This document shows positions 1,619 to 49,912 of a DNA stretch of 64,000 nt, in pieces; within the stretch, counting starts at the first letter, position 1; every line of letters starts with the position of its first letter. Source of the DNA: Octopus sinensis (Eukaryota); assembly GCF_006345805.1 (NCBI RefSeq), contig NC_043025.1, positions 62,001 to 126,000 of the forward strand, in the 5' to 3' direction. The position numbers and the translations under genes were made by a program. Under the pieces are notes generated by a model. That model did not search any database, was not told the DNA's origin, and saw only the letters and a list, made by a program, of their open reading frames with translations.

Positions 1619-2105
<487 letters not shown>

Positions 2106-2660: not shown

Positions 2661-5600
2661 ACATGGAGGATTTCAGACAGAAAATTAGAAATGGTGACGT
2701 CGAAGGAATTCAAAAATTAGTGAAAAAGGATCCAACAATAGTAAGTTGTTCTCTTTATTGCCTTCTCAAATTTGACTGTTTATTATTTTATACACAATAT
2801 GAAATGTTTTATACACAATATGAAAAGTAGCCACATATATTTGTCCATGATATTTCATTTCTTTCTTCACCTCTTTTCTCTAATCCTCATCATCGACATT
2901 TTTATAAATATTTAACCAAACATTGAGACATGACATAATTGATGGAATGTGAGTGAGAAAGAAATCCATCAAACACTGCAATGGGGTGTTCTGGCGGGAA
3001 GTATTCAGTCCAAGAGATGAGAGGCAGATCTCCCTAAGAGGAAGATCACATGGACTGACCTGTGGAGGCTGGAACCTTTGCACATCTCCTTCCTGCATGG
3101 AGCTGTGTATGACACACTCCCGACGCCAACAAACCTGTACAAATAGGGTTTGAGGGAAGACCAGCTGCGTAGACTTTGTGGGAAAGGCGCACTCTAGCAC
3201 ACATCTTGGCAGGGTGCAGAATAACTCTTTCTCAAGGCAGATACAAATACTTGCTCACACCCTGGAGCAGTAAAGGTGTAAGAAACATCATCACCAAGGG
3301 AAGATAACTGCCGCAAATAAGTTCGTGAAAGAGGGAGAGAAACCAGTAAAGCCAGCAAAAGCAATACATAGCTTGCTGCAAGGGTCTCAACCATGGGATA
3401 TGAAGGTAGATTTAAGGAAGATATTGCAGTTTCCCCAGGTTTTCCATACAACCCTGAGGCCTGATGTGGTTTTGTGGTCTGTAAAAGCCTAGAAAATTAT
3501 CATAGTTGAACGAACAGTCAAGTGGGGAGCGGGTTGTAACGAGGCCCATGAACGGAAGTGAGACAGATATAAGAGCTTTCTGCAGGCTCCATTCGCTTTG
3601 GTGAATTGATAAAACACATCCTTACAGGTGTAATTAACTCGTATATATATGTGTGTGTGTGTCTCTCTTTGTGTGTGTATGCATGTGTATCTATACTAGT
3701 GTGTGTCCCTAACAGGTAATTGATAACCGGTGTTGATGTAAATTCATCCCTGTTACATAGCCCTGAATCAAAAGAGAGCTATAGGTTGGTGCGAATTAGA
3801 CAGAAAAGGTACCACACATAAAAGACAAAATCGAGGAGGAGTCTCATGACTGAAACAATTAGAAGAGAGAAAGAAAAAGAAAGAGAAAAAAGAAGAGAGC
3901 AATAGAAAAATAGAAGTAAAAAAAGGAAAATTGAGAGAGAACTATAGAGAAGACAAAAAGAGAAACGAAAAAGAAAGCGAGAGAGAAAAAAAGAGAGAAA
4001 AGATAAAGAGTATGAGATTGAAAAAAGAAAACGGGAGAGAAAAGAAAGAGTGAGAAAAAGAAACGAGAGGAAGAAAAAGAGAAATGAAAGAGTGAGAGAG
4101 AGGAAGAAGGATAAAAAGAAAACGAGAGGGACAAAGAGAGAAATGAAAGGGTGAGAGAGAGGAAGAAGGATAAAAAGCATACGATAGGGAGAAAGAAGGA
4201 GAAAAAAGCGGGAGAGCGAGAAAAGAAAGAGAGAGAAAAAGAAACGAGAGGAAGAAAGAGAGAAATGAAAGGGTGAGAGAGAGGAAGAAGGATAAAAAGA
4301 AAACGAGAGGGAGAAAGAAGGAGAAAAAAGCGAGAGAGCGAGAAAAGAAAGTGAGAGAAAAAGAAACGAGAGGTTGAAATTGAGAAATGAAAGAGTGAGA
4401 GAGAGGAAGAAGGATTAAAAGCAAATGAGAGGGAGAAAGAAGGAGAAAAAAGAAAGTGAGCGAGAAAAGAAAGAGAGAGAAAAAGAAACGAGAGGAAGAG
4501 AGAAATGAAAGAGTGAGAGAGAGGAAGAAGGATAAAAAGAAAACGAGAGGAGAAAGAAGGAGAAAAAAGCGAGAGAGCGAGAAAAGAAAGAGAGAGAAAA
4601 ATAAACGAGAGGAAGAAAGAGAGAAATGAAAGAGTGAGAAAGAGGGCGAAGGACAAAAAGCAAACAAGACGGAGAAAGAAGGAGAAAAAAGCGAGAGGGC
4701 GAGAAAAGAAAGAGAGAGAAAAAGAAACGACAGGAAGAAATAGAGAAATGAAAGAGTGAGAGAGAGGAAGAAGGATAAAAAGAAAACAATAGGGAGAAAG
4801 AGAGAAATGAAAGGGTGAGAGAGAGGAAGAAGAATAAAAAGCAAACGAGAGGGAGAAAGAAGGAGAAAAAAGTGAGAGAGCGAGAAAAGAAAGACAGAGA
4901 AAAAGAAACGAGGGGAAGAAAAAGAGAAATGAAAGAGAGAGAGGGGAAGAAGGATAAAAAGAAAACGAGAGGGAGAACGAAAGTGAAAAACACGAGAGAT
5001 CGAGAAAAGAAAGAGTGAGGAAAAGAAAACGAGAGGAAGAAAGAGAGAAATGAAAGAGTGAGAGAGAGGAAGAAGGATAAAAAGCAAACGAGAGGGAGAA
5101 AGAAGGAGAAAAAAGCGAGAGAGCGAGAAAAGAAGGAGAGAGAGAGAAAGAAACGAGAGGAAGAAAGAGAGAAATGAAAGTGTGAGAGAGAGGAAGAAGG
5201 ATAAAAAGAAAACGAGAGGGAGAAAGAAGGAGAAAAAAGCGAGAGGACGAGAAAAGAAAGAGAGAGAGAAAAAGAAACGAGAGGAAGAAAGAGAGAAATG
5301 ACAGAGTGAGGGAGAGGAAGAAGGATAAAAAGAAAACGAGAGGGAGAACGAAAGAGAAAAACGCGAGAGATCGAGAAAAGAAAGAGTGAGGAAAAGAAAC
5401 GAGAGGAAGAAAGAGAGAAATGAAATAGTTAGAGAGAGTGCGAAGGATAAAAATAAACGAGAGGGAGAAAAGAAGGAGAAATAAGCGAGAGGGCTAGAAA
5501 GAATAGAGAGAAAAGAAACGAGAGGAAGAAAGATAGAATGACAGAGTGGGTAGAGGAAGAAGGATAACAATAAAACTGAGGGGAGAACTAAATAGAAAAA

Positions 5601-8600: not shown

Positions 8601-11600
8601 AGGATAAAATAAACGAGAGGGAGAAGGAAGGAGAAAAATGCGAGAGAGCGAGAAAGAAAGAGAGAGATAGAAGAAACGAGAGGAAAAGAGAGAAATTAAT
8701 AGTTAGAGAGAAGGATAAAAAGAAAACAATAGGGAATAGAAGGAGTTAAAAGTTGAGATACGAGAAAGGAAAGTTAGAAGATATATAAGAAACGATAAAA
8801 AGGATAGAAATGAAAGAGTTAGATAGATTAAGAAGGATAAAAGAACTAGGAAGAAAATAAGACGAAAGGGAAGAGATAAATAAAGAAAGAGAGAAAGACA
8901 ATGAGGAAATGAGAGAGAAAGAGAGAACAGACAAAGAAAACGATGAAAGAGAGGAAAGAAATAGATAGAGAGAGATAGGAGAAAGAAAACAGAGAAATAA
9001 TAATAGAAAAGGAAGATATAAAGAGAGATAGGGAGAAGGAAACCCGAAATAAAAAAGAGAGAAAGAATCAGATAGGTGAGAGAGCGAGAATTGAAAAGAG
9101 AAAGAGGAGAGGAAGAGATAAAGATTAAGATGATAGAAGAAGAGTACTGAGAGAAATAATAGAGAAAATGGGAGAGATAGAGAGAGAAGAAAGAGGAAAA
9201 CAAACACTGAAAGAGATAGAGAAATGAAATGAGGGGATAAAAGAGACTAAAAGGGATAAAGAGAATGAGAGAAAAGAAAGAGGGAGAAAGAGAGAAAAGA
9301 AAGGGAGAAGGCAAGAGAGGAGAGAAAATAAAAAAAGTAATCCCTTAAAGGGAGAATAGGAAAAGAGGAATAAGAGGGAAAGGAAAGGACAAAGAGACTG
9401 AAAGAAAGAGAGGGTTAGGGGAGAGAGAGAAAAGGAAATTGATGATAGTGAGAGGATAGAGAAGAGAAAAAATGCCAGAGAAATGAGATAACAGAGAGAA
9501 AGAGAAGAGAAAGAAGAGAGAAAGAGTAAAAGAAAAGGGAGAGATAAAGAAGAGAGAATAGAAAAGAGAGAAAAGCAGGAGAGAAAGGTAAATAGTGGGG
9601 GAGAAGGATAGAAGAGAAAAAGAGAGGGGGAAAAGAAGGAGGGAAAAGGGGAAAAAGAAAGTGAGAGATAAGTATAGAAGAGGAGATAAAGAGAAAAGAG
9701 ACAGAGAGGAAAGAGGGAATATAGGATAGAAAAGAGAGTGGAAATATAGAGAGAAGAAAGATACAAAAGAGAGGGAGAGAGGAAGTAATAAAAGAAAAGA
9801 GAGAGAGAAAAAAGTGGAAGAAGATAGAGAAAAGAGAAACAAGAGTAGAGACATAGAGAGAGAAAGATAGAAATAAATGTGAGGAATGAGAAAAGAAAGA
9901 GAGAGGAAAGGGATAGGAGAGAAAAGGACAAGAAAAGACATCAAAGAATATAGACAAGTAAAAGAGAAAGATTAAGAAAGAAAGAAAAGGCAATGAGAAG
10001 CACAGAGAGAAAAAGAGAGAAAGAGATAAAAGTAAAAGAGAAAGAGAGATGAAAAAGAAAAAGGTTGGGTGAAAGAGAGAAAAGGAATAGTGAAGGAGAC
10101 AGAGAGAAAAAGAAAGAAAGAAAGGTAATAGAGAGAGAGAGAGATAAAGAAAGAGAAAGAAAAAGAGAGAAACAGAGAAAAGTAAAATGGAAAAAGAGAG
10201 AAAAGAATGAGAGAGAGGGAAAAAGAGGAAAAAGAGAGAGGGAGAAAGAAAGAGAGAGAAGAAACAGAGAAAGAGGAAGGAAATGAGAGAGAGAAAGAGA
10301 GAAAAGGAAAATGGGAAAAGTGAGAAAAGAAAGAGAGAGAGAGTAAAAGAGACACGGAGAGAGAAGATAAGGGGAAAGAGAGAGAAGGTGAGAAAAGAAA
10401 GAGAAGGAAATAAATGACAGAGGGAGATAGAGAGAAAAGAAGGAGAAAGAGGAAAAAAACGAGAAAGAGAGTTAGAGACAACGAAAGAAAAGAGAGAGGG
10501 AGTAAAAGAGACACGGAGAGAGGAGAAGAAAGAAGATAGAAAAAGGGGAAAGAGAAAGTTAGAAAAGAAAGAGTAGGATAGAATGAAAGAGGGATTTAGA
10601 GAGTGAAAGATTAAGAGAAAGAGGAAAAAACAAGAAAGAGAGTGAGAGACAAAGAGAGAAAGAGAGAGAGAGAGTAAAGAGACACGGAGAGAGGAGAAAG
10701 AAAGATGAGAGAAAAAGGGAAGAGAGAGAAAGTGAGAAAAGAAAGAGAAGGAAAGAAATGAAAGAGGGAGATAAGAGAGAAAGAAGGAGAGGAAAGAGAA
10801 AGAAAACGAGAAAGAGAGTGAGAGACAAAGAGAGAAAAGAGAGAGAGAGAGAGACAAATGAATTTCTCTATTTCACATGTCCTCACTTTCTTCATTACAG
10901 ATTAATAAACCTATTGATGGAGTTGGACGAACTCCTTTAATGGAGGCCTGTTTTATGGGCGCCGATAGAAGAATCATCGACATTTTGATAAAAGCTGGGG
11001 CGAAGTTAGGAGCGAAAAACAGATGGGGTAATACAGCTTTACATTGGGCTGTGTTGAGGTAAGTTGAGAATCAAGTAAAATCTGCAGATGTGTTTTTGTT
11101 TGTAAATTTGTTGCAATTGCAGACACAGGTTCAATATCCAAAGATGCCATAGTTGTGGGACAACAGCACAACAGCAGACTAGCAAACAACAACAACAACA
11201 AGCTTCTCATTAGTCATTATTCAATCATAACAATCCCCATGATGATGATGATAACGGCGATGATGATGACGATGACGGTATTGATGATGTCGATCATCAT
11301 GATGGTGTTGTTGATTATGATGATGATGATGATGATGGAGGCGATGATGGTGATGCTGCTGCTGCTGATGATGATGATAATGATGATGATGATGATAATG
11401 ACGATGATGATGATGACGATGATGATGATGACTGTGATTATGCCGATGATGATGATTATAATTATAGTGGCGATGAATGATGATGATGACGACGATGATG
11501 ATGATGATTATGATGATGACGATGATAACCACGATGATGAAGCTGATGATGGTGATGGTGTTGTTGATGATGATTATGATGATGATGATCATGATGTTGA

Positions 11601-13225
11601 TGATAACGACGATGATGATGATGGTGATGGTGATGATGATGATTATGATTATGATGATGATGACGATAATGATGAATATGATGATGATGGTGATGATGAT
11701 GATAACGACGATGATGAAGATGATGAAGATATTGATAATAATGATGATGATGATGATGATAATGATGATGATGTGGATGATGATGATGACGACGATGATT
11801 ATTATGATTATCGTGATGATGACGATGATGATGATGATTATGATGTTATTATTATGATGATGATGATATTGATGAGGTTGATCTTGCTGTTGATGATGGT
11901 GTTGATGATGATGATAGATGCGATGATGATGATGATGATGATGAGGATGGTGATGATGGTGATGATGATGCCGATGATGATGATTATGATTATAGTGGTA
12001 ATGAATGATGATAATTTTGATTATGATGATATTGGAGATGTCGAAGATGATAATGATGATGATGGTGTTGGCAATGAGGGTGATGATGATGAAGGCTATG
12101 ATGATGATGATGGTGATGATGATGATAGTGATGATAATGATGGTGATGATGGTGATGATGATGATGATTATTATGTCAATGATGGAGCTGGTGGCAATGA
12201 TGATGATGGTAATGATGTTGATGAACATGATATTGATGATAATAGTGCAGGTGATGAAGATGGTGATGATGATGAAGGCGATGATGATGATGGCGATGAT
12301 GATGATGATGATTATGTCAATGATGGAGGTGGTGGCAATGAGGATGATGGTAATGATGTTGATGAACACGATATTGATGATAATAGTGCAGGTGATAATG
12401 ATGATGATGATGATGACGATGATGTTTCGTCTCAAAGCCAAAATATTTTCATATTTAATGTAAATTAGTCAATGTTTCTATCTTTTACTCTCAGTGGTCG
12501 ACCTCATGCTGTGGAGATCTTACTATCTCGGGGCAGTGAGGTAAGTATCTTATTTATATCCTTTCGTATGTTCTACTGAAGACGAAAGAATCTATTATGA
12601 GATTAATTTCGAAATTGATTCAATATAGAAATAACGAACTTTTTAAAAAACATTCTATCGTCCGGCTTCTCCCGATTTCAGTTCTTCGTGTTTTTTTTCT
12701 GTAGCCAGTAAATAATATGTGGAAATTGACGATTTAAAAGTCTCTTATCAGCAAATTGTCATTGAAATACTTTTCTTTAGCCCTTATTTATAAGTTGTTT
12801 ATAATTTAACAGTAAAGTTATTTTAATATGCTGCCACATTTTTTGATGGAATATTTTTCTGTAAAATAAACTTCATCCTATATTAGTATGTATATATATA
12901 TATATATATAAGTGAAGGCACGTGGCTAAGTGGTTAGGGCAATCGGCTCACGATCGGAAGGTTGTGAGTTCGATTCCCGGCGACGCGTTGTGTCCTTGAG
13001 CAAGACACTTTATTTCACGTTGCTCCAGTCCACTCAGCTGGCAAAAATGAGTTGTACCTGTATTTCAAAGGGTCTGCCTTGTCACACTCAGTGTCACGCT
13101 GAATCTCCCTGAGATACACGTGTCTGTGGATTGCTCAGTCACTTGCACGTTAATTTCATGAGCAGGCTGTTCCGTTGATCAGATCAGCGGGGACCCTCGT
13201 CGTCGTAACTGACGGAGTGCTCCTT

Positions 13226-13259
<34 letters not shown>

Positions 13260-13581
13260 TATATATGAGTATGTACACACACACACACACACACACACAT
13301 ACATATACATATATATATATATATATAATATATTATATATATATATATATATCTTGAGCCCCCGTATTTTCCCCATATCTTTCTGGTGTTTTCCTACTTT
13401 TAATGATAATCATTGATTTTCGATGACGATTATGTTGAGAAAACAGAAGCATTTGATTAGTTTCAAACCAATCACAACTCCAGAGATAATCGTTGATTAA
13501 GACATTGAAAGGGATGGATTTTCAGAAAATTTCATTAAGAAATGTTTATATTAAAAAGCTTCATGAGGAACATACAACAAC

Positions 13582-13618
<37 letters not shown>

Positions 13619-13772
13619 GGCACAAGAATGGCTGTGTGGTAAGCCGCTTGCTTACAAACCATATGGTTCCGGGTTCAGTCCCACTTGGGCAAGTGTCTTG
13701 TACTATAGCCTCGGGCCGACCAAAGCCTTGTGAGTGGATTTGGTAGACGGAAACTGGAAGAAGCCCGTCCTA

Positions 13773-13811
<39 letters not shown>

Positions 13812-14048
13812 GTGTTTAAGTGTGCGTGTTTGTTACTCACCATCGCTTGACAACCGATGCTGGTGTGTTTACGCCCCCGTAACTTAGCGGTTCGGCAAAG
13901 AGATCGATAGAATAAGTACTAGACTCACAAAGAATAAGTCCTGGTCGCAATTTCCTCGACTAAATGTGGTGCTCCAGCATGGCCACAGTGAAATGATGGA
14001 AACAAGCAAAAGAGTAAAAAAGATCTATTTACACACAGACACACACAC

Positions 14049-14086
<38 letters not shown>

Positions 14087-29798: not shown

Positions 29799-32700
29799 AG
29801 ATATATCATCATCATCATTATCATCATCGTTTAACATCCGTTTTCCGTGCTAGCACGGGTTGGACGAAAATATATATAAGTAATATTCGTAGGCACGCCA
29901 ACATGAGTATCTGTTCGGATGGACTCTACTGCGAATGTTTAACCCCAAGAGAACACCTCCTCTAGCTAATTAACAATGCAAAGGTGCATCCGATTAATTG
30001 CGAGCAGGGGATCGAACCCCTACCATCTTATAGCAACAGAACCAGCAGACCAGGTCTGGTTTCGGGCTATTCCTGCCACTCTTCAGTACTGGATACCTCA
30101 TCTGCTAATCTGTGGAGACAGGATGTATATAATAAAGTATGTGTATATAAAGAAACCTCTGTAGATATATTTGTTCAGAAGAATGCGTTCGATGTTAGAA
30201 GTGAAATATATTTCTGGAATATATGCAGTTCACTGTGTGTCAACCAAATTTCTATGATGTATCAGGGTCAAGACAAACATTTATCAATGTATGTATGCAT
30301 GTGTGTGTATGTATGTATGTGTGTGTGTGTGTGAGCATGCCATTTAACTACAAAAATATCTGTATGTATGTAATTGTTTAAAGAAGAGTTTCTGCTCTAC
30401 TCTTGGTAGTTACTGATGTATCTTATAATATTCTCTATTCCGAACATGTAAATAATATAATATTTATTATAAATGAATGTTATTGATTGATGTTTCTGTT
30501 TTGTCCACAGATGTTTGTTGTGCAGAAAAATAAAGAGGCCACAACAAAAGTTCATCCTGTGAACACCTTCTGACATGTGAAGAATGTTCAAACGTTCCAC
30601 TTAAACGATGCCTGAGGTGTTTGAAACTGTGTAACAAGCAGAGGTCGAGTTGGTAAGAATATTCTTTGCTGATCTGTCTGTTTGTCCTGCTTGTCCCATT
30701 GCCTTATTGTGTAGAATAATATACTTCATGTTGTTATGTAGACAGAGGTCTGCCATAATCTGGCAGATTTATGATAAAAGGTGTTCCTAGTGTCTGTTCT
30801 CTGTAATAGTATATCTCTCACACTACATCCACTAAACATTGATTTTATCCAAGTAGGAAACATGTCACACTTCAAGAGGGTTGTAGTCTGCAACATAAAA
30901 ATAATGGAGGATTCTGCAAGATACTTAGTGAGTAACTGAAGTATCAATAAATCTCCATCAACTCTATAATTAATTATGAGTTATTAGAAGATAATTAAAT
31001 ACAACAGTACTTACAAGGACATCAGTGTCATCTTGGTAAAGTATTAAAATTAGTAGAATATTTTAAAGGAGTAAAATTATATGTCACTAGTTTGAGAGAC
31101 TTTAACACACAATTCCATGTTGTTATGTTTGTAATTGGAGGATATTAAGGCTAATAGAGACAGTTTTGTTTGTCAAGCAACCAGATCATGAAACCTTCAA
31201 ATATATCCTGAATGAGGTGACATTCTGGTGAACTGTGAAGTTAAATTAGGGATTATCAGCAACAATGTTTAACAAAAAGATTAGGTGTATGTATTACCTT
31301 CTTGAAGTGGTTGTGACATGTGTTTGTTGTTATATCTTTGATGAATAAATATGTTGACACTGGAATTAAACAGGTTGTTAGTGAAGATCAGGGTTTTGAG
31401 AATACATTTAGGGTCATAGATATAAGCAAGGAAACCAAAACCTACAGATTAACTGTTATTATGTGATATAATTACAGCATTGTTAGATTATGTAGGATAT
31501 CTTAACAGAAAGAGGAAATTTACAAAGATCAACTAGAGTTCGTATTGGAGCTAAATATTGGCTATTACATGGGTCCACTGTTGAAAGTATAAAAATATTG
31601 ACCAAAAGCATTATGATCGCTGGTTGGCCATTGATGATATGAATGTCTCTCAATAATAAAATATAGATTATTAATAAATATGAAGAAATTGTGCTATAAA
31701 TAACTATAAAACTTGGAAACACATATTTCAGAGAGTCCAAAGTTTGAAGAGAAGGGAATGCAGACTGTGGCAGAGACAGTTGATGAGTTTAAAATTAGAG
31801 ATCTTAATTAATTTCTATAGATTTTACATTCACCTAAGCTATTTTGCTTATTAGAATGGTGGAGAACAGATCCCATTTCTAATTTCCATTTGAAAGTTTA
31901 GCTCTAAAGTAATTGTATTAAAAATATTACTGAAATTTCATAAAGTCATGTTTAACATGTTTGGTCAAATGGATAAATTAAAAGCCACAATAGAGTTAAT
32001 ATTGTCTTCTATGGAACTATAATTTATGTTTTTTAGGTGTAAACTCGTGAGTTAATAAAATAGTTGTTTGTTTTTCTACTAAGATTTTTCGTAAGTTTTC
32101 TGATAGGTTATTCTTGATGTTGTTATGTAGCCAGATGTCTGTCGTAATATTTTGTATTTTCTGGGGTTGTGTACCCTCAATGTCTCTGGTTAGAATACAT
32201 TTTGTAGTTGTAAATTAGAAAATTCTAATTAAATGTTAACTCTGTATAAGAATATTCATCATGAACTTAATTTTATTAAATGTTAAATTAAATATTGAAC
32301 CATGAACATCTGTTTATATTTAAACAAATTATTGGTGTTTATACAAAATATACAATCAGAAATTGAATTTGACTTGAATACACAAATCCTTCTTTGTAAC
32401 TATATATAATATACACTTATTACATGTTTTGAACAAAACACATTACATCCATATAGTCATTTTTTCTCACTCTTGTTAGATTTTAGATGATATTAATGCT
32501 AAAAGAGGCACGGTTTTCTGAGTGTTTCACCCTTTGGTCTTGATTGTTGCGTTCAAATTATTTAATGAAAGATAGTCATTGTTATTTGACCAGGAAATGA
32601 ATTAATCATTAGTATTTGGCAGTGGACTTGGTTATATCTTTCTTCGTTTGCTCATGGAACTACCATAATATTAGCTGTGCTGAGACACAATCATATTCAT

Positions 32701-35700
32701 AGTAATGAAGGTTATATGTTCTTTACTCAGATTATATACAATCTATATTGATATCTAGTATTGTACCGTCAAGCACAGTGCTATTGTATCACATATATAC
32801 CCGATTATCATGATAATTAATAAGCTATAATTCATTAACTCTCTTACATTTGTATGTATGAAATGTTAACATATTTTGTCATAGGAACATTGTGTACCTT
32901 CACATTACATTTTATATCTTGGTAGGGATCATGTTGGGGAAGGGTGTATGGAATTTGGCTTGTGGAGATGTTTTTTAGGGGACAGATTGTGTGCGGGTTG
33001 GAGGGTATGCATATAAAGGACATGTCTTTATGGGTGCAGTTTTACTTAATTAGAGAGGAACGTTGATTAGTGAATTCTAGATATGAGAGGACAGTGCCAT
33101 GCCATAGATTTGGCAGTTATAAGAAAAGAAAGACAATGCTAAGAGAAAACTGTCATCAAGTGTTAATTAAATGAGATAATTGCAACATTGTTAGAATATT
33201 TAATGTGTTTTTAGAGAAGAGAGAGAGAGAGAGAGAGAGAGGGAGAGGGTGGATTTAGAAATGTTAGTCTGTTTTATTGTGGACATATTGAGCTACTACA
33301 TGGGACCACTGTAGAAAGTACAGAAATATTGACCAAAACCATAGTGGTCAACATTTGACCATTAACGACAGGAATTGAATGTCTCACAATAAAAAGATAG
33401 AGTTTAATAAAAATAAAGATAAAGAAAGTTTCTTTTTAAATGTAAAACTTGGAAATATTTATTTCAGAGGCTCCAAAGTTTGAAGACAGGTGTGTACAAA
33501 CAGAGGCTATATGTCAGGAATTAGGGGCTGCATCTCAGGCAATTGGTGAGTATAAAATAATAGTTCCCAATTGATTTCTGTAAGGTTTTCTTCCCCCGAG
33601 TATATTGTGCTTGAAAGAATAACTGAAAACAGCTTCCATTCCTATTTTCCAATTGAACGATTATCTGTATAATAATTGAATTAAAGATATCGATTTACTG
33701 AGAGTTTATGAAACACCCATTGAGGTTAATGCTGTTGGTAATAATGTTCAAATTAGAAGACACAATAGAGTTAATTTTGTCATTTGGTCACAGAACTCAT
33801 CATCATCATCATTTAACATCCGTTTCTTATCGTGGCATGGGTCGGACGATTTCACTGGCAAGGCAGTAGGCTGCGCCAGGCTCCAATGTGATCTGGCAAG
33901 GTTTCCACATATGTATGCCATTCCTAATGCCAACCAATCCGAGAGTGTGGTGGGTGCCTTTTACGTGCCACCGACACAGGAGCCAGTCGGGCTGGGGGCT
34001 GGCATCGACCACATTCGGATGGTGCTTTTTACGTGCCACCGGCACAGGGAACTAGTCAGGCGGCAGTGACAAGGACCTATGCTTCTATGGTACTTATAAC
34101 GTGACACAGGAACAGGTGCCAGTCAGGCGGCACTGGCATCGGTCACAACTACAATTTCCATTTTGATTTCGATCTTGAATTGCTTTTGATTTGTCATTTC
34201 TGTTATTGCACGGTGGACTATGATGAAAACGAGGGGTTTAGGAATGATCCCTAGTGAACTCCTACTTCTATCCGGAATTCTTCACTATACTCATTGCCAA
34301 TCCTCACCTTACTACAGGGCCTCTTCAACTCTTATAATCGCTCGTCAATCCCTAGTTTCCGCATTAGCTGTAAAAAGGATTCTATTAAATATTCCACTGA
34401 AATTTCATAAAATCAAGGTTAACGTGGTTGGTAAAATGGTTAAATAAGAAGACATAATAGAGTTAATGATGTCTTTTAGGACAGAGAACTAAAACATTTT
34501 GTTGTTTATTTGTAAACAGGTGAGGTAACGAGAAAGTTTTTGTTTCTTTTGCTACTAAGGTCTTTCCAAAGTTTTCTCATAGGTTATTGTTGTTGTTATT
34601 GTTATGTAGCCAGATGTCTGTCAGGATATGTTGTTTAGGTACCTACCCTGAATGTCTCAGGTCAGAATAACTTTGTTATAAATTAAAGAAATTAAAAATC
34701 AAATCTCTAAGATTGTAAGTATAATGATCATTAACGTTGATTAAATATTAAATTTAGTATTGAACGGTGAACATCTGTTTGCATTTAAACAAAACATTGG
34801 TGTTGACATAAATTATAAAGATAGGAATAAATATGAGTTCCCTGTGTGACTTGATCTCACAAATCCTTGTTTGTAACTATATATAATATACACTTATTAC
34901 ATTGTTTGAACAACATTTACCATCCATATAGTCATTCTTTTTCTCACACTTGTTAGATTTTAGATGATATTAATGCTAAAAGAGGCACAGTTTTCTGAAT
35001 GTTTCACCCTTTAGACTTGATTGTTGCGTTCAAATTATTTAATGAATGATAGTCATTGTTATTTGACCAGGAAATGAATTAATCATTAGTATTTGGCAGT
35101 GGACTTGGTTATATCTTTCTTCGTTTGCTCATGGAATTACCATAATATTAGCTGTGCTGAGACACAATCATATTCATAGTAATGAAGGCTATATGTTCTT
35201 TACTCAGATTATATACAATCTATATTGATATCTAGTATTGCACCGTCAATCACAGTGCCATTGTATCACATATATACCCAATTATCATGATAATTAATAA
35301 GCTATAATTCATTAACTCTCTTACATTTGTATGTCTGAAATGTAAACTTATTTTGCCATAGGAACATCCTGTACCCTCACCTTGCATTTTATATCTTCTT
35401 AGGGATCATGTTGGGGAAGGGTGTATGGAATTTGGCTTGTGGAGATGCTTTTTAGGGGACAGATTGTGTGCGGGTTGGAGGGTATGCATATAAAGGACAT
35501 GTCTTTATGGGCGCAGTTTTACTTAATTAGAGAGGAATGTTGATTAGTGAATTCTAGAGATGAGAGGACTGTGCCATGCCATAGATTTGGCAGAGTTATA
35601 AGAAAAGAAAGACAAAGCTAAGAGAAAACTGTCATCAAGTGTTAATTAAATGAGATAATTGCAACATTGTTAGAATATTTAATGTGTTTTTAGAGAGAGA

Positions 35701-38700
35701 GAGAGAGAGGGGGGGAGACGGTGGATTTAGGAATGTTAGTCTGTTTTATTGTGGACATATTGGGCTATTACATGGGACCACTGTAGAAAGTACAGAAATA
35801 TTGACCAAAACCATAATGGTCAACATTTGACCTGTAAGGCCACCAATTGAATGACTCACTATAACAAGATAGAGTTTAATAAAAGTAAAGATACAGACAT
35901 TTTAATATCAAATGTAAAACTTGGAAATATTTATTTCAGGGGCTCCAAAGTCTGAAGACAGGTGTGTAAAAAAAGAGGCTACATGTCAGGAATTAGGGGC
36001 TGCATCTCAGGCAATTGGTGAGTATAAAATAATAGTTCCCAATTGATTTCTGTAAGGTTTTCTTCCCCCGAGTATATAGTGCTTGAAAGAATAACTGAAA
36101 ACAGCTTCCATTCCTATTTTCCAATTGAACAATTATCTGTATAATAATTGAATTAAAGATATCGATTTACTGTGAGTTTATGAAATACCCATTGAGGTTA
36201 ATGCTGTTGGTAATAATGTTCAAATTAGAAGACACAATAGAGTTAATTTTGTCATTTGGTCACAGAACTCATCATCATCATCATCATCATCATTTAACAT
36301 CCGTTTCTTATGGTGGCATGGGTCGGACGATTTCACTGGTAAGGCAGTAGGCTGCGTCAGGCTGCAATGTGATCTGGCAAGGTTTCCACATATGTATGCC
36401 ATTCCTAACGACAACCACTTCGAGAGTGTGGTGGGTGCCTTTTACGTGCCACCGACACAGGAGCCAGTTGAAGTTGGGGCTGGCATTGTCCACGTTCGGA
36501 AGGTACTTTTTATGTGCCAACGGCACAGGGAACCAGTCAGGCGGCACTGGCAACAAATAATGTTTGAATGGTACTTATTATGTGCCACCGGCACGGGTGC
36601 CAGCCAGGCGGCACTGGCATCGGCCATAATTACAATTTGCATTTTGATTTCGATCTTGATTTGATTTTGATTTGTGATTTCTGGTTTTTGGTTTTACTTG
36701 ACTCAGAAATTCTTCTCAAGCGCAACTTATCACTCTGTGATTCAAGGGTACTTTTAAAAGGGGCTGGTTATGCGCCACTGGTATAGGCTACAGCTGTGAT
36801 CTCACTTCACTTGCCGAGTCCTCTTAATCACATCATATTTACAGAGGTCTCTGTCTCTTGCCATTACCTCTGTGAGGCCCAACGTTCGAAGGTCGTTTCA
36901 CCACGTCATCCCCTGTCTTCCTGGGTCACCCCTTTGCACGGGTTCTTTCCACTGTGAGGGTGTAACACTTCTTTCCACAGCTCTCCTCATCCATACCATG
37001 ACCATACCAGTGCAGTTGTCTCTCTTGTACATCACATCTGATGCTTCTTATGTCTAACACTTCTCTCAGGCCTCTTCACTCTGCCTTGTGTACACACTGA
37101 CATCGTTGCGTTCAAATTATTTAATAGAATATAGTCATTGTTATTTGACCGGGAAATGAATTAATCATTAGTATTTGGCAGTGGACTTGGTTATATCTTT
37201 CTTCGTTTGCTCATGGAACTACCATAATATTAGCTGTGCTGAGACACAATCATATTCATAGTAATGAAGGTTATATGTTCTTTACTCAGATTATGTACAA
37301 TCTATATTGATATCTAGTATTGCACCGTCAAGCACAGTGCCATTGTATCAAATACACTTGCGTCGGAAATTAATTAGCACTTCTCAAATTTCTACATTTT
37401 CTTACATTTTCTTAATTTAATTAACTTATTATCAGAAACGAACTCGTTTTTAATCAAAAATTTATTAAAACATATCCCAGCACACCACATAATTGATATT
37501 AATCGTGAAATTTAGTCAATATCTTGTTGCTCCTCCTTTGGCAGCAATGACAGCTACTACGCGGGTCGGCATGCTGTCTATGAGTGCCTGCAGGTACTGT
37601 GCAGGGATGGCCCCCATGCAGCAAGAAGTGCCCCAAACAGCTCGTGTCGGTTCCTGTATTGCTGCACATTCAAATCCCTACCCAATCGACTCCAGAGGTT
37701 CTCAATAGGGTTCAGGTCAGGTGACTGGCTAGCACGTACTCCTCGCCACCAAAGAGGTATCCCGTACTATCTCAACGTACTTTGCTGCGTTGATGTTGCC
37801 TTCGACGGCATAGAGCCACCCAACACAACTGTAGCTGAACGCCCCTCACACCATCAGACCACCCCCACCATGCTTCATGGTGAGCAAATCAAGGGTGCTA
37901 ATTAATTTCTGACGGTAGTGTATATACCCAATTATCAAGATAAATAATTAGCTATAATTCATTAACTCTCTTACATTTGTATGTTTGAAATGTAAACTTA
38001 TTTTGTCATAGGAACATTGTGTACCCTCACCTTACATTTTATATCTTGTTAGGGATCATGTTGGGAAAGGGTGTATGGAATTGGCTTGTTGTGGAGATGT
38101 TTTTTAGGGGACAGATTGTGTGCGGTTGGAGGGTATGCATATAAAGGACATGTCTTTATGGGTGCAGTTTTACTTAATAGAGAGGAATGTTGATTAGTGA
38201 ATTCTAGATATGAGAGGACTGTGCCATGCCATAAATTTGGCACAGTTATAAGAAAAGAAAGACAATGCTAAGAGAAAACTGTCATCAAGTGTTAATTAAA
38301 TGAGATAATTGCAACATTGTTAGAATATTTAATGTGTTTTTAGAGAGAGGAGAGAGAGAGGGAGAGGGTGGATTAGAGAAATGTTAGTCTGTTTTATTGG
38401 ACATATTGAGTTATTACATGGGACCACTGTAGAAAGTACAGAAATATTGACCAAAACCATAATGGTCAACATTTGACCATTAACAACAGGAATTGAATGT
38501 CTCACAATAAAAAGATAGAGTTTAATAAAAATAAAGATAAAGAAATTTTATTATTAAATGTAAAACTTGGAAATATTTATTTCAGAGGCTCCAAAGTTTG
38601 AAGACAGGTGTGTACAAACAGAGGCTATATGTCAGGAATTAGGGGCTGCATCTCAGGCAATTGGTGAGTATAAAATAATAGTTCCCAATTGATTTCTGTA

Positions 38701-41368
38701 AGGTTTTCTTCCCCCGAGTATATTGTGCTTGAAAGAATAACTGAAAACAGCTTCCATTCCTATTTTCCAATTGAACGATTATCTGTATAATAATTGAATT
38801 AAAGATATCGATTTACTGTGAGTTTATGAAATACCCATTGAGGTTAATGCTGTTGGTAATAATGTTCAAATTAGAAGACACAATAGAATTAATTTTGTCA
38901 TTTGGTCATGGAACTCATCATCATCATCATCGTTTAACATCCGTCTTTATAATAGCATGGGTCGGACGATTTCACTGGCAAGGCAGTAGGCTGCGCCAGG
39001 CTTCAATGTGATCTGGCAAGGTTTCCACATATGTATCCCATTCCTAATGCCAACCACTCCAAGAGTGTGGTGGGTGCCTTTTACTTGCCACCGACACAGG
39101 AGCCAGTCGGGGTGGGGGCTGGCATCGACCACATTCGGATGGTGCTTTTTACGTGCCACTGGCACAGGGAACTAGTCAGGCGGCAGTGACAAGGACCTAT
39201 GCTTCTATGGTACTTATAACGTGCCACAGGAACAGGTGCCAGTCAGGCGGCACTGGCATCGGTCACAACTACAATTTCCATTTTGATTTCGATCTTGAAT
39301 TGCTTTTGATTTGTCATTTCTCTTATTGCCTGGTGGACTATGATGAAAACGAGGGTTTTAGGAATGATCCCTAGTGAACTCCTAATTCTATCCGGAATTC
39401 TTCACTATACTCATTGCCGATCCTCACCTTACTACAGGGCCTCTTCAACTCTTATAATCGCTCGTCAATCCCTAGTTTCCGCATTAGCTGTAAAAAGGAT
39501 TCTATTAAATATTCCACTGAAATTTCATAAAATCAAGGTTAACGTGGTTGGTAAAATGGATAAATAAGAAGACACAATAGAGTTAATGATGTCTTTTAGG
39601 ACAGAGAACTAAAACATTTTGTTGTTTATTTGTAAACAGGTGAGTTAACAAGAAATATTTTCTTTCTTTTACTACTAAGGTCTTTCCTAAGTTTTCTGAT
39701 AGGTTATTGTTGTTGTTGTTGTTGTTGTTATGTAGCCAGATGTCTGTCATGATATGTTGTTTAGGTACGTACCCTGAATGTCTCAGGTCAGAATAACTTT
39801 GTTATAAATTAAAGACATTAAAAATGAAAGCTCTAAGATTATAAGTATAATGATCATTAACGTTGATTAAATATTAAATTTAGTATTGAACGGTGAACAT
39901 GTTTACATTTAAACAAAATATTGGCGTTGACATAAAATACAAAGATAGGAATTAAATATGAGTTCCCTGTGTGACTTGATCTCACAAATCCTTGTTTGTA
40001 ACTATATATAATATACACTTATTACATTGTTTGAACAACATTTACCATCCATATAGTCATTCTTTTTCTCACACTTGTTAGATTTTAGATGATATTAATG
40101 CTAAAAGAGGCACAGTTTTCTGAGTGTTTCACCCTTTGGTCTTGATTGTTGCATTCAAATTATTTAATGGAAGTTAGTCATTGTTATTTGACCAGGAAAT
40201 GAATTAATCATTAGTATTTGGCAGTGGTTATCTTTCTTCTTTTGCTCATGGAACTACCATAATATTAGCTGTGCTGAGACACAATCATATTCATTGTAAT
40301 GAAGGTTATATGTTCTTTACTCAGATTATATACAATCTATATTGATATCTAGTATTGCACCGTCAAGCACAGTGCCATTTCATCACATATATACCCAGTT
40401 ATCATGATAATTAATAAGCCATAATTCATTAACTCTCTTACATTTGTATGTCTGAAATGTAAACATATTTTGTCATAGGAACATCGTGTACCCTCACCTT
40501 ACATTTTATATCTTGTTAGGGATCATGTTGGGGAAGGGTGTATGGAATTTGGCTTGTGGAGATGTTTTTTAGGGGACAGATTGTGTGCGGGTTGGAGGGT
40601 ATGCATATAAAGGACATGTCTTTATGGGCTCAGTTTTACTTAATTAGAGAGGAATGTTGATTAGTGAATTCTAGAGATGAGAGGACTGTGCCATGCCGTA
40701 GATTTGGCAGAGTTATAAGAAAAGAAAGACAAAGCTAAGAGAAAACTGTCATCAAGTGTTAATTAAATGAGATAATTGCAACATTGTTAGAATATTTAAT
40801 GTGTTTTTAGAGAGAGAGAGGGTGGATATAGAAATGTTAGTCTGTTTTATTGTGGACATATTGGGCTATTACATGGGACCACTGTAGAAAGTACAGAAAT
40901 ATTGACCAAAACCATAATGGTCAACATTTGACCATTAATGACAGGAATTGAATGTCTCACAATAAAAAGATAGAGTTTAATAAAAATAAAGATAAAGAAA
41001 TTTTATTATTAAATGTAAAACTTGGAAATATTTATTTCAGAGGCTCCAAAGTTTGAAGACAGGTGTGTACAAACAGAGGCTATATGTCAGGAATTAGGGG
41101 CTGCATCTCAGGCAATTGGTGAGTATAAAATAATAGTTCCCAATTGATTTCTGTAAGGTTACTTCCCCCGAGTATATTGTGCTTGAAAGAATAACTGAAA
41201 ACAGCTTCCATTCCTATTTTCCAATTGAACGATTATCTGTATAATAATTGAATTAAAGATATCGATTTACTGTGAGTTTATGAAATACCCATTGAGGTTA
41301 ATGCTGTTGGTAATAATGTTCAAGTTAGAAGACACAATAGAATTAATTTTGTCATTTGGTCATGGAAC

Positions 41369-41408
<40 letters not shown>

Positions 41409-44400
41409 TTAACATCCGTTTCTTATGGTGGCATGGGTCGGACGATTTCACTGGCAAGGCAGTAGGCTGCGCCAGGCTCCAATGTGATCTGGCAAGGTTT
41501 CCACATATGTATGCCATTCCTAATGCCAACCACTCCAAGAGTGTGGTGGGTGCCTTTTACTTGCCACCGACACAGGAGCCAGTCGGTGTGGGGGCTGGCA
41601 TCGACCACGTTCGGATGGTGCTTTTTACGTGCCACCGGCACAGGGAACTAGTCAGGCGGCAGTGACAAGGACCTATGCTTCTATGGTACTTATAACGTGA
41701 CACAGGAACAGGTGCCAGTCAGGCGGCACTGGCATCGGTCACAACTACAATTTCCATTTTGATTTCGATCTTGAATTGCTTTTGATTTGTCATTTCTCTT
41801 ATTGCCTGGTGGACTATGATGAAAACGAGGGGTTCAGGAATGATCCTAGTGAACTCCTACTTCTATCCGGAATTCTTCACTATACTCATTGCCGATCCTC
41901 ACCTTACTACAGGGCCTCTTCAACTCTTATAATCGCTCGTCAATCCCTAGTTTCCGCATTAGCTGTAAAAAGGATTCTATTAAATATTCCACTGAAATTT
42001 CATAAAATCAAGGTTAACGTGGTTGGTAAAATGGTTAAATAAGAAGACATAATAGAGTTAATGATGTCTTTTAGGACAGAGAACTAAAACATTTTCTTGT
42101 TTATTTGTAAACAGGTGAGTTAACGAGAAAGATTTTCTTTCATTTACTACTAAGGTCTTTCCTAAGTTTTCTGATAGGTTATTGTTGTTGTTGTTGTTAT
42201 GTAGCCAGATGTCTGTCATGATATGTTGTTTAGGTACCTACCCTGAATGTCTCAGGTCAGAATAACTTTGTTATAAATTAAAGACATTAAAAATAAAATC
42301 TCTAAGATTATAAGTATAATGATCATTAACGTTGATTAAATATTAAATTTAGTATTGAACGGTGAACATCTGTTTGCATTTAAACAAAATATTGGTGTTG
42401 ACATAAAATATAAAGATAGGAATTAAATATGAGTTCCCTGTGTGACTTGATCTCACAAATCCTTGTTTGTAACTATATATAATATACACTTATTACATTG
42501 TTTGAACAACATTTACCATCCATATAGTCATTCTTTTTCTCACTCTTGTTAGATTTTAGATGATATTAATGCTAAAAGAGGCACAGTTTTCTGAATGTTT
42601 CACCCTTTGGTCTTGATTGTTGCGTTCAAATTATTTAATGAAAGATAGTCATTGTTATTTGACCAGGAAATGAATTAATCATTAGTATTTGGCAGTGGAC
42701 TTGGTTATATCTTTCTTCGTTTGCTCATGGAACTACCATAATATTAGCTGTGCTGAGACACAATCATATTCATTGTAATGAAGGTTATATGTTCTTTACT
42801 CAGATTATATACAATCTATATTGATATCTAGTATTGCACCGTCAGGCACAGTGCCATTGTATCACATATATACCCAATTATCAAGATAATTAATAAGCTA
42901 TAATTCATTAACTCTCTTACATTTGTATGTATGAAATGTAAGCTTATTTTGTCATAGGAGCATCGTGTACCCTCACCTTACATTTTATATCTTGTTAGGG
43001 ATCATGTTGGGGAAGGGTGTATGGAATTTGTGGAGATGTTTCTTAGGGGACAGATTGTGTGCGGGGTGGATGGTATGCACATAAAGGACATGCCTTGATG
43101 GCCTCGATGTTACTTAGCCAGTTGGGTCTTTTCAAGCACAGAAAATTGCTGATTGTCTCAGTCGTTTTAGTTATCTTCCGTGTGAAGCTCAGCATCTGAA
43201 CATCATTTCTCACCACTTTGCCCCATGTCTTCCTCAGTCTTCCTCTTCCTCAGATTCTCTCCACATTTAGAGATCCGCATCTCTTTATGCTGATCACCTC
43301 ATCCATATGCATCACATAACCATACTATGAAAGATCTCTCTTTTGAACTCTACATCGGATGACTCTTATACCCAGATTTTCTCTTAAGACATTTCCACTG
43401 CGACTTACCTGAACACTGATGTTGTACATCCAGTGGAGCATGCTGGCTTCATTTGCCTCCGACCCTTTGCATGTCTTCTATCTTCACAACCTATCTTTCA
43501 TTATTGTGTTGTACATCTGTCCGTACACAAGTCTCATACAATCTGCTTTCCACTCTTAGGGAGAAGCCCTTCGTTACCTACAGAGTGGGGAGATTTGGGA
43601 CGGTTAATCTTGACTATTGGTTATAGGAATATTTCACAATTATAAAATATCGATGTTCATTAAATAAATTTTAATATAAAGTATAATCTTGGAAATATTT
43701 ATTTCAGCAAGGCCAATATTTGAAGACAAAGAGGTCCAGACAGTAGAAGGGCCACGTGGTGAGTATAGAATGACATTACATAATTGATTTCTATAAATTT
43801 TAGCTTTTACTGAGCTATTTTGGTCAATAGAATGACCGAGAACAGGTTCCAATGTTATATTTCATTCGAATGCTTAGCTATAAAGAAATTCTGTTCTTCT
43901 ACAACAACACGAATATCCAATAAATGTACTTTATGCAAACATCAGTTACTCATTCACTCGCAGAAAGAAAGATACAAAAATTAAATATAAACCCTGAAAC
44001 GGTTCTCTCCCGTTAAGGAGAATATTCGCCCTGTTTGTCATCTCATTGTACTCATTCATTCTCTCTCTCTCACTCATGCTCTTTCTCTCCGTCTTTTCAA
44101 GAAAGTTGCTGGTTAAAAGTTTCAATACAATAAATGATATCATCTTCATCTTTTCTCATCTGCTCTCCATGCTCCCATACACTAGGTGGGTCATCACTGT
44201 CCAAGTCAGTTGTATCTGAAATTACTGTCAACCGTCATTTGTTGAGGAAAACATTGCAGCTTTTCTAAGGTGGTAGACCCTTTCTAACCCCAACCACTTT
44301 ATAAAGGGTCGTGGGTATATTTTATTGTCGCACAAGCATTAGAAATGATCATCAATTTCCCAACAATATCAAACGTTCCTTTCAAACTTGTGGTGTCATC

Positions 44401-49912: not shown

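What the first reader, a model, noticed from the sequence alone, without database searches (positions are those of the whole stretch)
2661..49912. Ankyrin-RING-Death domain architecture
Seen: MIB-like ankyrin array and RING joined to a C-terminal Death domain, with no MIB-HERC2/ZZ N-terminus in the window. Established: Mind bomb ligases end in RING fingers, not Death domains; Death domains couple to innate immune and apoptotic adaptors (MyD88, FADD, RIPK1). Inference: a lineage-specific shuffled ligase/adaptor, possibly an immune signalling family. I cannot confirm novelty without a search.
Basis: partly seen in the sequence, partly recalled or inferred. Interest (0 to 1): 0.75.

Follow-up and report, generated by a model that had tools for sequence, protein, structure and literature searches.

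The report
Decayed octopus ankyrin-RING-Death ligase gene
The window holds one copy of an octopus-only gene family that joins ankyrin repeats, a ubiquitin-ligase RING finger and a Death domain, but this copy is broken by frameshifts as assembled, so the interest lies in the uncharacterised family rather than in this locus.

Summary
They lie in order on the + strand, from the ATG at 2663 to the stop at 49910-49912, and all have GT-AG splice sites. They encode about seven ankyrin repeats, an IAP/MIB-class RING exon, a run of small linker exons and a two-exon Death domain.

The window is Octopus DNA. More than 60 protein clusters from O. sinensis, O. vulgaris and O. bimaculoides carry the same Death domain, mostly behind ankyrin repeats and a RING. 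RefSeq names them "MIB2-like". Two searches found this combination in no other genus. I found no paper on it.

The domain call holds: a family profile matches the RIPK1, ankyrin-G and PIDD Death domains, and a predicted model matches only Death domains.

This copy cannot encode the protein as assembled. Ankyrin exon 14921-15074 lacks one base. The RING exon 30511-30652 carries three indels relative to an intact paralogue. The spliced frame hits its first stop in exon E4 (26399-26608). O. sinensis RefSeq models use only its first three exons, within a 272-kb gene.

Most likely (about 0.6) it is a decaying paralogue. Assembly error (about 0.3) is not excluded.

The linker exons sit in a 2.47-kb tandem array derived from the first Death exon.

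The parts
2663..2740 (+). Exon E1 (78 nt, phase 0 to 0): start codon and [26 protein letters not shown], the N-terminal cap of the ankyrin array
   Evidence: 100% identical to the N-terminus of O. sinensis XP_036370783.1 (P0001); donor gtaagt
10901..11058 (+). Exon E2 (158 nt, phase 0 to 2): ankyrin repeats
   Evidence: 100% identical to P0001 residues 27-78; canonical splice sites
12495..12540 (+). Exon E2b (46 nt, phase 2 to 0): [16 protein letters not shown]
   Evidence: Matches P0001 residues 79-94; canonical splice sites
14921..15074 (+). Exon E3 (154 nt, 155 in paralogues): ankyrin repeat exon with a 1-base deletion near 14938 (GATGAT-ATGG) that shifts the frame
   Evidence: Alignment with intact O. 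sinensis paralogues L002 and L003; VNPRDD and GQTPLHWAC... lie in different frames
22587..22623 (+). Exon E3b (37 nt, phase 2 to 0): [12 protein letters not shown]
   Evidence: BLOSUM scan with paralogue peptides, score 51; canonical splice sites
26399..26608 (+). Exon E4 (210 nt, phase 0 to 0): ankyrin repeats
   Evidence: tblastn hits at 72-81% identity to P0002 to P0004; canonical splice sites
28237..28412 (+). Exon E5 (176 nt, phase 0 to 2): last ankyrin repeat and ...KLEAFLPPQ
   Evidence: tblastn hits at 86-88% identity to P0002 to P0004; canonical splice sites
30511..30652 (+). RING exon relic (142 nt, 140 in the intact paralogue): +AA in an A run (~30526), -C in a C run (~30558), +1 near 30623; all eight zinc ligands kept but spread over three frames
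   Evidence: DNA alignment with the intact exon of L003 (P0032 gene) and the O. vulgaris counterpart L001; zf-C3HC4_3 at 30.1 bits only after frames are joined, 18.1 bits with X at the joins
31900..43116 (+). Tandem array of about 4.5 units of ~2.47 kb (85-95% identical, higher-order period ~5.1 kb), with degenerate copies on both sides (around 31.7 kb and out to ~45.6 kb); each unit carries one linker mini-exon
   Evidence: Self-BLAST; unit alignment A1
33468..33545 (+). Linker mini-exon type A (78 nt, phase 1 to 1): [26 protein letters not shown]. Further copies lie at 35940-36017, 38586-38663 and 41041-41118. A type B exon (51 nt) lies at 43708-43758. Dead copies lie at ~31.73 kb (donor GT to AT) and 45553-45600 (acceptor lost)
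   Evidence: the same peptides occur in the RING-to-Death linker of P0001, P0002 and P0004
48103..48174 (+). Death exon 1 (72 nt, phase 1 to 1): [24 protein letters not shown]; its intron flanks are homologous to the mini-exon units
   Evidence: flanks 65-72% identical to the array units; the same L003 segment matches both this exon's unit and the ~31.7-kb unit by BLAST
49713..49912 (+). Death exon 2 with stop codon TGA at 49910-49912
   Evidence: Death domain supported

Best explanation
The window carries one paralogue of an Octopus-restricted, tandemly duplicated gene family. Intact members encode a single-chain E3 ubiquitin ligase: about seven ankyrin repeats (partner or substrate binding), one IAP/MIB-class RING (E2 recruitment), a variable linker of 17- to 26-residue cassette exons, and a C-terminal Death domain (homotypic docking onto Death-domain signalling assemblies). 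The inferred mechanism for intact members is that the Death domain brings the ligase into oligomeric Death-domain platforms of the RIPK1, PIDD or MyD88 kind. There the RING would ubiquitinate components bound by the ankyrin array. This copy has the full canonical exon set, but it is disabled as assembled by one frameshift in ankyrin exon E3 and three in the RING exon. It is most likely a partly decayed duplicate. Its first three exons survive as alternative 5' exons spliced onto a downstream intact copy, as in the O. sinensis isoforms X2 and X3 of a 272-kb gene. Shown: exon structure, domain identities, the lesions, family size and taxonomic restriction. Inferred: pseudogene status rather than assembly error, and any role in signalling or immunity.
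For: Exon map with GT-AG sites and matching phases. Whole-gene colinearity with O. sinensis paralogues: L002 over window 11.5-29.1 and 31.9-50.5 kb, and L003 over 11.1-33.8 kb, at 84-97% identity. Ankyrin, RING and Death calls. The RING's nearest solved relatives are the cIAP2, cIAP1 and XIAP RINGs. The four frame-breaking indels are defined against intact paralogues, and the spliced ORF fails. No protein in 5.8 billion is more than 78% identical to the middle exons. E1, E2 and E2b are 100% identical to XP_036370783.1, whose gene spans 272 kb and takes its remaining exons from elsewhere. The colinear O. vulgaris RING exon (L001 71447-71564) is also frame-broken, at different positions. Another partial copy in L001 has an in-frame stop, so decay is common in this family. 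Family size and Octopus restriction rest.
Against: The RING exon differs from the intact L003 exon by only one or two substitutions but three indels. Two of these are length changes in short A and C runs, and two more homopolymer indels lie within 60 nt of the exon. The window lineage has about twice as many unique small indels per unique substitution as L001, L002 or L003. All eight zinc ligands are retained. This pattern also fits residual long-read assembly error. Pooled dN/dS of about 0.84 rests on very few changes and does not discriminate. I could not confirm that the window comes from the O. sinensis assembly, and no RNA or read data were available.
Confidence: 0.6

Rival explanations
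1. The locus is an intact, expressed ankyrin-RING-Death gene, and the four frame-breaking indels are assembly or polishing errors in a paralogue-rich region that is hard to polish.
For: Indels outnumber substitutions in the RING exon relative to L003. Two of the three sit in homopolymer runs, and there are further homopolymer indels in the flanking intron. The window has about a two-fold excess of small indels. All zinc ligands, all splice sites and all other exons are intact.
Against: Three indels in 142 nt far exceeds the window's background of roughly 2-3 small indels per kb. The E3 deletion is not in a homopolymer. The O. vulgaris counterpart, from an independent assembly, is broken in the same exon at other positions. 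No annotated protein contains these exons, and RefSeq isoforms splice from E2b to distant exons.
Confidence: 0.3
2. The Death exons belong to a separate transcript and are not joined to the ankyrin-RING exons.
For: O. sinensis isoform X5 (P0122) ends after a type B linker exon without a Death domain. The O. vulgaris model P0081 joins leucine-rich-repeat (LRR)-like exons to the orthologous last Death exon.
Against: Death exon 1 is a phase 1 to 1 internal exon with an acceptor site and no initiator. The RING exon, the linkers and both Death exons share phase 1. RefSeq O. sinensis, O. bimaculoides and O. vulgaris models of paralogues with the same colinear structure read ankyrin-RING-linker-Death in one ORF. 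P0081 spans a 100-N scaffold gap and is chimeric.
Confidence: 0.05
3. It is a true Mind bomb (MIB1/MIB2) orthologue whose N-terminal MIB/HERC2-ZZ exons lie outside the window.
For: Automatic RefSeq names (MIB2-like, MIB1-like) and the ankyrin plus zf-C3HC4_3 combination.
Against: Annotated family members start with Met at the exon E1 homologue. They show no MIB_HERC2, ZZ or MIB repeat domain and have a single RING. There are dozens of paralogues, all restricted to Octopus.
Confidence: 0.02

Closest known systems
Mind bomb E3 ligases (MIB1, MIB2)
   Same: An ankyrin-repeat array is followed by a C-terminal RING of the zf-C3HC4_3 class. This is the basis of the automatic 'MIB2-like' names. From my own knowledge, not tested here: vertebrate MIB2 acts on Death-domain signalling components such as RIPK1.
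   Different: There is no MIB/HERC2-ZZ-MIB/HERC2 module and no MIB repeats. There is one RING rather than two or three. A Death domain follows the RING. The family is expanded and confined to Octopus.
Inhibitor-of-apoptosis ligases (cIAP1/2, XIAP; oyster IAPs with a Death domain and a RING)
   Same: The RING's closest solved relatives are cIAP2, cIAP1 and XIAP. cIAPs combine a death-fold domain (CARD) with this RING class. Oyster IAPs with a Death-domain fold plus a RING have been described (PMC8917759).
   Different: There are no BIR domains. Ankyrin repeats take the place of the BIR array, and the Death domain lies C-terminal to the RING.
Ankyrin plus Death-domain proteins (ankyrin-1/2/3, DAPK1, NF-kB p100/p105, ANKDD1)
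   Same: Ankyrin repeats and a Death domain occur in one chain. The ankyrin-G Death domain is among the best sequence and fold matches. An amphioxus DAPK1-like protein is among the nearest non-Octopus relatives of the Death domain.
   Different: None of these has a RING. They carry ZU5-UPA, kinase or Rel-homology modules instead.
RIPK1, PIDD, FADD and TRADD Death domains
   Same: These are the best profile matches (RIPK1 4.6e-9, PIDD 8e-8) and fold matches (TM up to 0.79) to the family's Death domain.
   Different: Sequence identity is only about 18-28%. No kinase, leucine-rich repeat (LRR), ZU5 or DED partner domain is present.

Membership tests
Death domain (Pfam PF00531, death-fold superfamily) | Sequence match to the Pfam Death model at or above the curated cut-off | tested here: not met
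   The window's 90-residue C-terminus scores 19.7 bits, E 9.5e-4, against a cut-off of 22.6. The paralogue P0004 scores 33.5 bits.
Death domain (Pfam PF00531, death-fold superfamily) | Profile-level homology to experimentally solved Death domains | tested here: met
   Family profile A2, which includes the window, matches RIPK1 (4.6e-9), ankyrin-3 (8.3e-9), PIDD (8e-8), Fas, CRADD, FADD and TRADD.
Death domain (Pfam PF00531, death-fold superfamily) | Compact helical-bundle fold superposable on known Death domains | tested here: met
   The AlphaFold2 model has pLDDT 83.9. Its top 23 Foldseek PDB hits are all Death domains, with TM 0.58-0.79.
RING finger, zf-C3HC4_3 (IAP/MIB class) | Eight zinc ligands with C3HC4 spacing in one open reading frame | tested here: not met
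   As assembled the ligands lie in three different frames with stops between them. No single-frame RING pattern occurs anywhere in the window.
RING finger, zf-C3HC4_3 (IAP/MIB class) | Match to PF13920 at or above the cut-off once paralogue-defined indels are bridged | tested here: met
   30.1 bits against a cut-off of 27, E 4.2e-7. The joined peptide is 95.7% identical to the intact RING of P0032.
Ankyrin repeat array | Multiple 33-residue repeats that match the Pfam Ank models | tested here: met
   Ank 131.5 bits, Ank_2 129.5 bits, several stretches. One repeat is interrupted by the E3 frameshift.
Mind bomb (MIB1/MIB2) ligases | N-terminal MIB/HERC2-ZZ-MIB/HERC2 module and MIB repeats | tested here: not met
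   No such Pfam hits in the conceptual product or in the intact relatives P0001, P0002 and P0004, all of which begin at the E1-type exon.
Mind bomb (MIB1/MIB2) ligases | Two or three C-terminal RING fingers at the very C-terminus | tested here: not met
   There is a single RING, followed by a linker and a Death domain.
IAP family | At least one BIR domain | tested here: not met
   No BIR hit in Pfam scans of the product or its relatives.
Octopus 'MIB2-like' ankyrin-RING-Death family | Exon-by-exon and intron colinearity with annotated members | tested here: met
   Colinear with the P0003 gene (L002) and the P0032 gene (L003) at 84-97% DNA identity. Exon peptides are 72-100% identical to members.
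Octopus 'MIB2-like' ankyrin-RING-Death family | Uninterrupted ORF across all exons (a functional member) | tested here: not met
   The spliced product shifts frame in E3 and terminates in E4. The RING exon adds three more shifts. Whether these are real mutations could not be tested without reads.

The most novel reading that the evidence does not exclude
Octopus has evolved its own, rapidly duplicating and decaying family of Death-domain-bearing RING ligases. They would act as ubiquitin-writing adaptors in innate-immune or cell-death Death-domain assemblies. Their spacer would be tuned by cassette mini-exons that arose from tandem duplication of the first Death-domain exon. This locus would be a snapshot of birth-and-death turnover in that family, with 5' exons of a dying copy captured by a neighbouring copy.
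Probability: 0.3. Interest if true: 0.6.

Novelty: new variant of a known kind. Interest (0 to 1): 0.38.

Why it matters
Cephalopod innate immunity and cell-death signalling are poorly mapped. A family of dozens of genes that fuses a Death domain to an IAP/MIB-class ligase, and is found only in Octopus, is a concrete and testable candidate for lineage-specific signalling components. It would parallel the IAP and Death-domain expansions of bivalves, echinoderms and amphioxus.

The locus also shows how the family evolves:
- by whole-gene segmental duplication;
- by exchange of RING exon types between copies;
- by a tandem array that turned a Death-domain exon into repeated linker exons;
- by decay of individual copies.

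For genome annotation, it warns that the 'MIB2-like' names are misleading and that several public models in these clusters are chimeric.

Tried and rejected
- A single-frame RING regex over all six frames found nothing, which led to the frameshift analysis.
- Tandem Repeats Finder missed the 2.47-kb array because its period limit is 500; self-BLAST found it.
- The exact-protein look-up of P0001 and P0004 failed because only the longest isoform is on record. P0121 was found, but its 272-kb gene was too long for DNA to be returned.
- I first read the loss of colinearity between the window and O. vulgaris L001 upstream of window ~28.75 kb as a rearrangement between the ankyrin and RING halves. 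I rejected this: L001 has a 100-N scaffold gap exactly at that boundary, and two O. sinensis paralogues are colinear across it.
- dN/dS against paralogues and the O. vulgaris counterpart gave 0.3-1.8 on a handful of changes, which is uninformative.
- Pfam scans of nine other long ORFs found nothing.
- Rfam and tRNA scans found nothing.
- Five literature searches found no description of this family.
Full report
**What the window is.** The sequence is AT-rich eukaryotic DNA, with large microsatellite blocks and a 100-N gap at 347-446. A protein search with the concatenated exon translations returned almost only Octopus sinensis, O. vulgaris and O. bimaculoides proteins. RefSeq names them automatically as "E3 ubiquitin-protein ligase MIB2-like", "MIB1-like", "ankyrin-3" or "PSMD10-like". 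The best hit is O. sinensis XP_036370783.1 (P0001). It is 100% identical to the first three exons of the window and then diverges. The window is therefore DNA of the Octopus sinensis/vulgaris group. I could not prove which assembly it comes from.

**Gene structure.** I mapped four relatives with tblastn and added a BLOSUM scan for one 12-residue exon. This gave a + strand gene whose exons all have GT-AG splice sites and mutually compatible phases.
- E1, 2663-2740, contains the ATG.
- E2, 10901-11058.
- E2b, 12495-12540.
- E3, 14921-15074.
- E3b, 22587-22623.
- E4, 26399-26608.
- E5, 28237-28412.
- RING exon, 30511-30652.
- Four 78-nt linker mini-exons at 33468-33545, 35940-36017, 38586-38663 and 41041-41118.
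- One 51-nt linker mini-exon at 43708-43758.
- Death exon 1, 48103-48174.
- Death exon 2, 49713-49912, with TGA at 49910-49912.

In intact paralogues the RING exon ends in phase 1. Here its net +2 nt shifts that. The linker exons and Death exon 1 are phase 1 to 1, and Death exon 2 begins in phase 1. The Death exons therefore cannot start a protein. In paralogues they are built to be read through from the RING exon.

**Domain identities.**
- Ankyrin repeats are unambiguous in Pfam (Ank 131.5 bits).
- The C-terminal 90 residues score 19.7 bits for the Pfam Death model (E 9.5e-4), below the 22.6 cut-off. The close relatives P0001 and P0002 are not detected at all, while the paralogue P0004 scores 33.5 bits.
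- I aligned 13 family Death segments, including the window's (A2). This profile hits solved Death domains: RIPK1 (4.6e-9), ankyrin-3 (8.3e-9), PIDD (8e-8), then Fas, CRADD, FADD and TRADD.
- An AlphaFold2 model of the window's segment has pLDDT 83.9. Its top 23 Foldseek matches in the PDB are all Death domains, with TM 0.58-0.79. The Death assignment is sound, although this subtype has diverged.
- The RING belongs to the zf-C3HC4_3 class. The nearest solved relatives of the paralogue RING are cIAP2, cIAP1 and XIAP.
- None of the scanned proteins has MIB/HERC2, ZZ or BIR domains, and all annotated members begin at the E1-type exon. "MIB-like" therefore describes only the ankyrin-plus-RING half. 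The defining Mind bomb features are absent.

**The lesions.** No RING pattern can be read in any single frame of the window.
- In the RING exon, CLLCR lies in one frame, [10 protein letters not shown] in a second, [23 protein letters not shown] in a third, and VTSRGRV back in the second, with stops in each frame.
- An intact O. sinensis paralogue exists: the P0032 gene on contig VCDQ01001579.1 (L003). It is colinear with window 11.1-33.8 kb.
- Relative to that intact exon, the window's RING exon has +AA in an A run, -C in a C run and +1 near 30623, plus one or two substitutions.
- When the frames are joined, the peptide is 95.7% identical to the P0032 RING and scores 30.1 bits for zf-C3HC4_3. 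With X placed at each join it scores 18.1 bits.
- Ankyrin exon E3 lacks one base (GATGAT-ATGG) relative to both L002 and L003. It is 154 nt where phase requires 155.
- Spliced as assembled, the ORF leaves frame in E3 and reaches a stop in E4.

**Pseudogene or assembly error?** In favour of real decay:
- Three indels in 142 nt is far above the window's own background of roughly 2-3 small indels per kb.
- The E3 deletion is not in a homopolymer.
- The colinear O. vulgaris segment comes from an independent assembly (L001, OX597843.1, 93.6-97.4% identical to window 28.75-54.5 kb). Its RING exon is also frame-broken, at different positions.
- A second partial family copy in L001 has an in-frame stop in its Death exon.
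- No protein in the 5.8-billion collection is more than 78% identical to exons E3 through E5.
- O. sinensis isoforms X2 and X3 use E1 and E2 (X2 also E2b) and then splice to exons outside the window, within a gene of 272 kb.

In favour of assembly error:
- In the RING exon, indels outnumber substitutions. Two of them are homopolymer length changes.
- Two further homopolymer indels lie within 60 nt of the exon.
- The window lineage has about twice as many unique small indels per unique substitution as L001, L002 or L003.
- All eight zinc ligands and all splice sites are intact.

dN/dS is uninformative (pooled about 0.84 on few changes). I put real decay at about 0.6 and assembly error at about 0.3.

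**Do the Death exons belong to the same gene?** Two O. sinensis paralogues are colinear with the window. L002 (the P0003 gene) is colinear through ankyrin exons, introns, array and Death exons. L003 covers E2b to the first linker exons. Their RefSeq models read ankyrin-RING-linker-Death in one ORF, as do O. bimaculoides and O. vulgaris models. Some isoforms end before the Death domain, for example P0122.

I first took the loss of colinearity with O. vulgaris upstream of window 28.75 kb for a rearrangement between the two halves. In fact it coincides exactly with a 100-N scaffold gap in L001 (66234-66333). The O. vulgaris model P0081, which joins LRR-like exons to the last Death exon, crosses that gap and is chimeric.

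**Family size and distribution.**
- A family Death-domain HMM finds the domain in 61 of the 94 Octopus clusters from the first search, most with a RING upstream.
- A RING-to-C-terminus profile (A3) returned 54 proteins, all from Octopus.
- An exhaustive HMMER search with the Death profile against 1.84 billion representatives gave 1346 hits at E <= 1e-3.
- Among the best 150, eight of the newly returned proteins combine ankyrin repeats, a RING and the Death domain. All seven that I looked up are from O. sinensis, O. vulgaris or O. bimaculoides.
- The nearest outsiders are a multi-Death-domain protein of the starfish Acanthaster and an amphioxus DAPK1-like protein.
- Hits beyond the best 150 were not visible, and unannotated cephalopod genomes are not in these collections. 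"Octopus only" therefore means "in what is deposited".

**Literature.** Five full-text searches found no description of this family. The nearest published parallel is the set of oyster IAPs that combine a Death-domain fold with a RING (PMC8917759).

**The linker array.** Between the RING exon and the Death exons lies a tandem array of about 4.5 units of ~2.47 kb (31.9-43.1 kb, 85-95% identical). Degenerate copies lie on both sides, around 31.7 kb and out to ~45.6 kb. Each unit carries one phase 1 to 1 mini-exon. Type A encodes [14 protein letters not shown](I/T)[11 protein letters not shown], and type B encodes a 17-residue peptide.

These peptides form the RING-to-Death linker in annotated relatives, in variable numbers. 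P0123 has none, P0001 has one and P0002 has three. Two copies in the window are dead: the donor is GT to AT at ~31.73 kb, and the acceptor is lost at 45553.

The segment holding Death exon 1 is homologous to these units on both intron flanks (65-72% identity) and at the start of the exon. One segment of L003 matches both by BLAST. The linker cassettes therefore arose by tandem duplication of the first Death exon. The O. vulgaris counterpart has three type A copies instead of four.

Paralogues also differ in which of two RING exon types they carry. L002 has the P0001-like type inside an 11-kb non-colinear segment.

**Mechanism.** For intact family members the shown parts are an ankyrin array, an IAP/MIB-class RING and a Death domain on one chain. 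The rest is inferred from established knowledge of these domains: the Death domain docks the ligase onto oligomeric Death-domain assemblies, and the RING then modifies partners held by the ankyrin repeats. From my own knowledge, vertebrate MIB2 and the cIAPs ubiquitinate RIPK1, so the fusion is functionally plausible. Nothing here tests it. For this locus, the most likely state is a decaying duplicate whose 5' exons remain in use.

**Verdict.** The architecture is a lineage-specific variant assembled from well-known modules. It is already present in public protein sets under misleading names, and I found no published characterisation of it. Interest is moderate.

Noticed in passing
window 4020-10860: A purine-rich (about 90% A+G) minisatellite of about 6.8 kb, with nested periods of 30/59/122/181 nt, fills most of intron 1. 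GC skew is about +0.8.
   Followed up: partly
window 11239-12424 and 15697-22127: (ATG)n of about 1.2 kb and (GAT)n of about 6.4 kb (about 2146 copies, almost no C) lie inside introns 2 and 4 of the gene.
   Followed up: partly
window 51951-52484 and 55307-62022: Imperfect (TA)n tracts downstream of the gene; the larger is about 6.7 kb with 6-10% GC.
   Followed up: no
window 62493-64000: A tandem repeat of a 184-nt unit (at least 8 copies, 89% matches) runs off the end of the window.
   Followed up: no
window 347-446: A run of exactly 100 N (a scaffold gap) lies 2.2 kb upstream of the start codon.
   Followed up: no
window 1620-2100, 13630-14580, 53000-54110 (both orientations): A dispersed SINE-like repeat of about 400 nt, with many copies also in L001, L002 and L003 (77-94% identity).
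   Followed up: partly
L001 66234-66333 (O. vulgaris OX597843.1): A 100-N gap sits exactly where colinearity with the window begins. The deposited model CAI9744465.1 (P0081) spans it and strings together a RING, half a Death domain, LRR-like exons and the orthologous last Death exon, so it is a chimeric prediction.
   Followed up: yes
L001 9983-18672: A second, partial family copy starts in the middle of an E5-type exon and continues through a RING and Death exons. Its Death exon 1 has an in-frame stop (…KKLGNN*WQV), so it is another decayed copy.
   Followed up: partly
L002 20146-31795 against window 29115-31898: Paralogues carry one of two RING exon types inside otherwise colinear genes: P0004/P0032-like (CLWCRNKAATTKVHPCGH…) or P0001-like (CRWCQKNMATVRLQPCGD…). 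This suggests cassette exchange. The P0001 type has Asp where the RING His ligand is expected.
   Followed up: partly
window 29870-31160 and other aligned introns: The window lineage has about twice as many unique 1-3-nt indels per unique substitution as three related contigs, and they cluster around the RING exon. This may reflect local assembly quality.
   Followed up: partly
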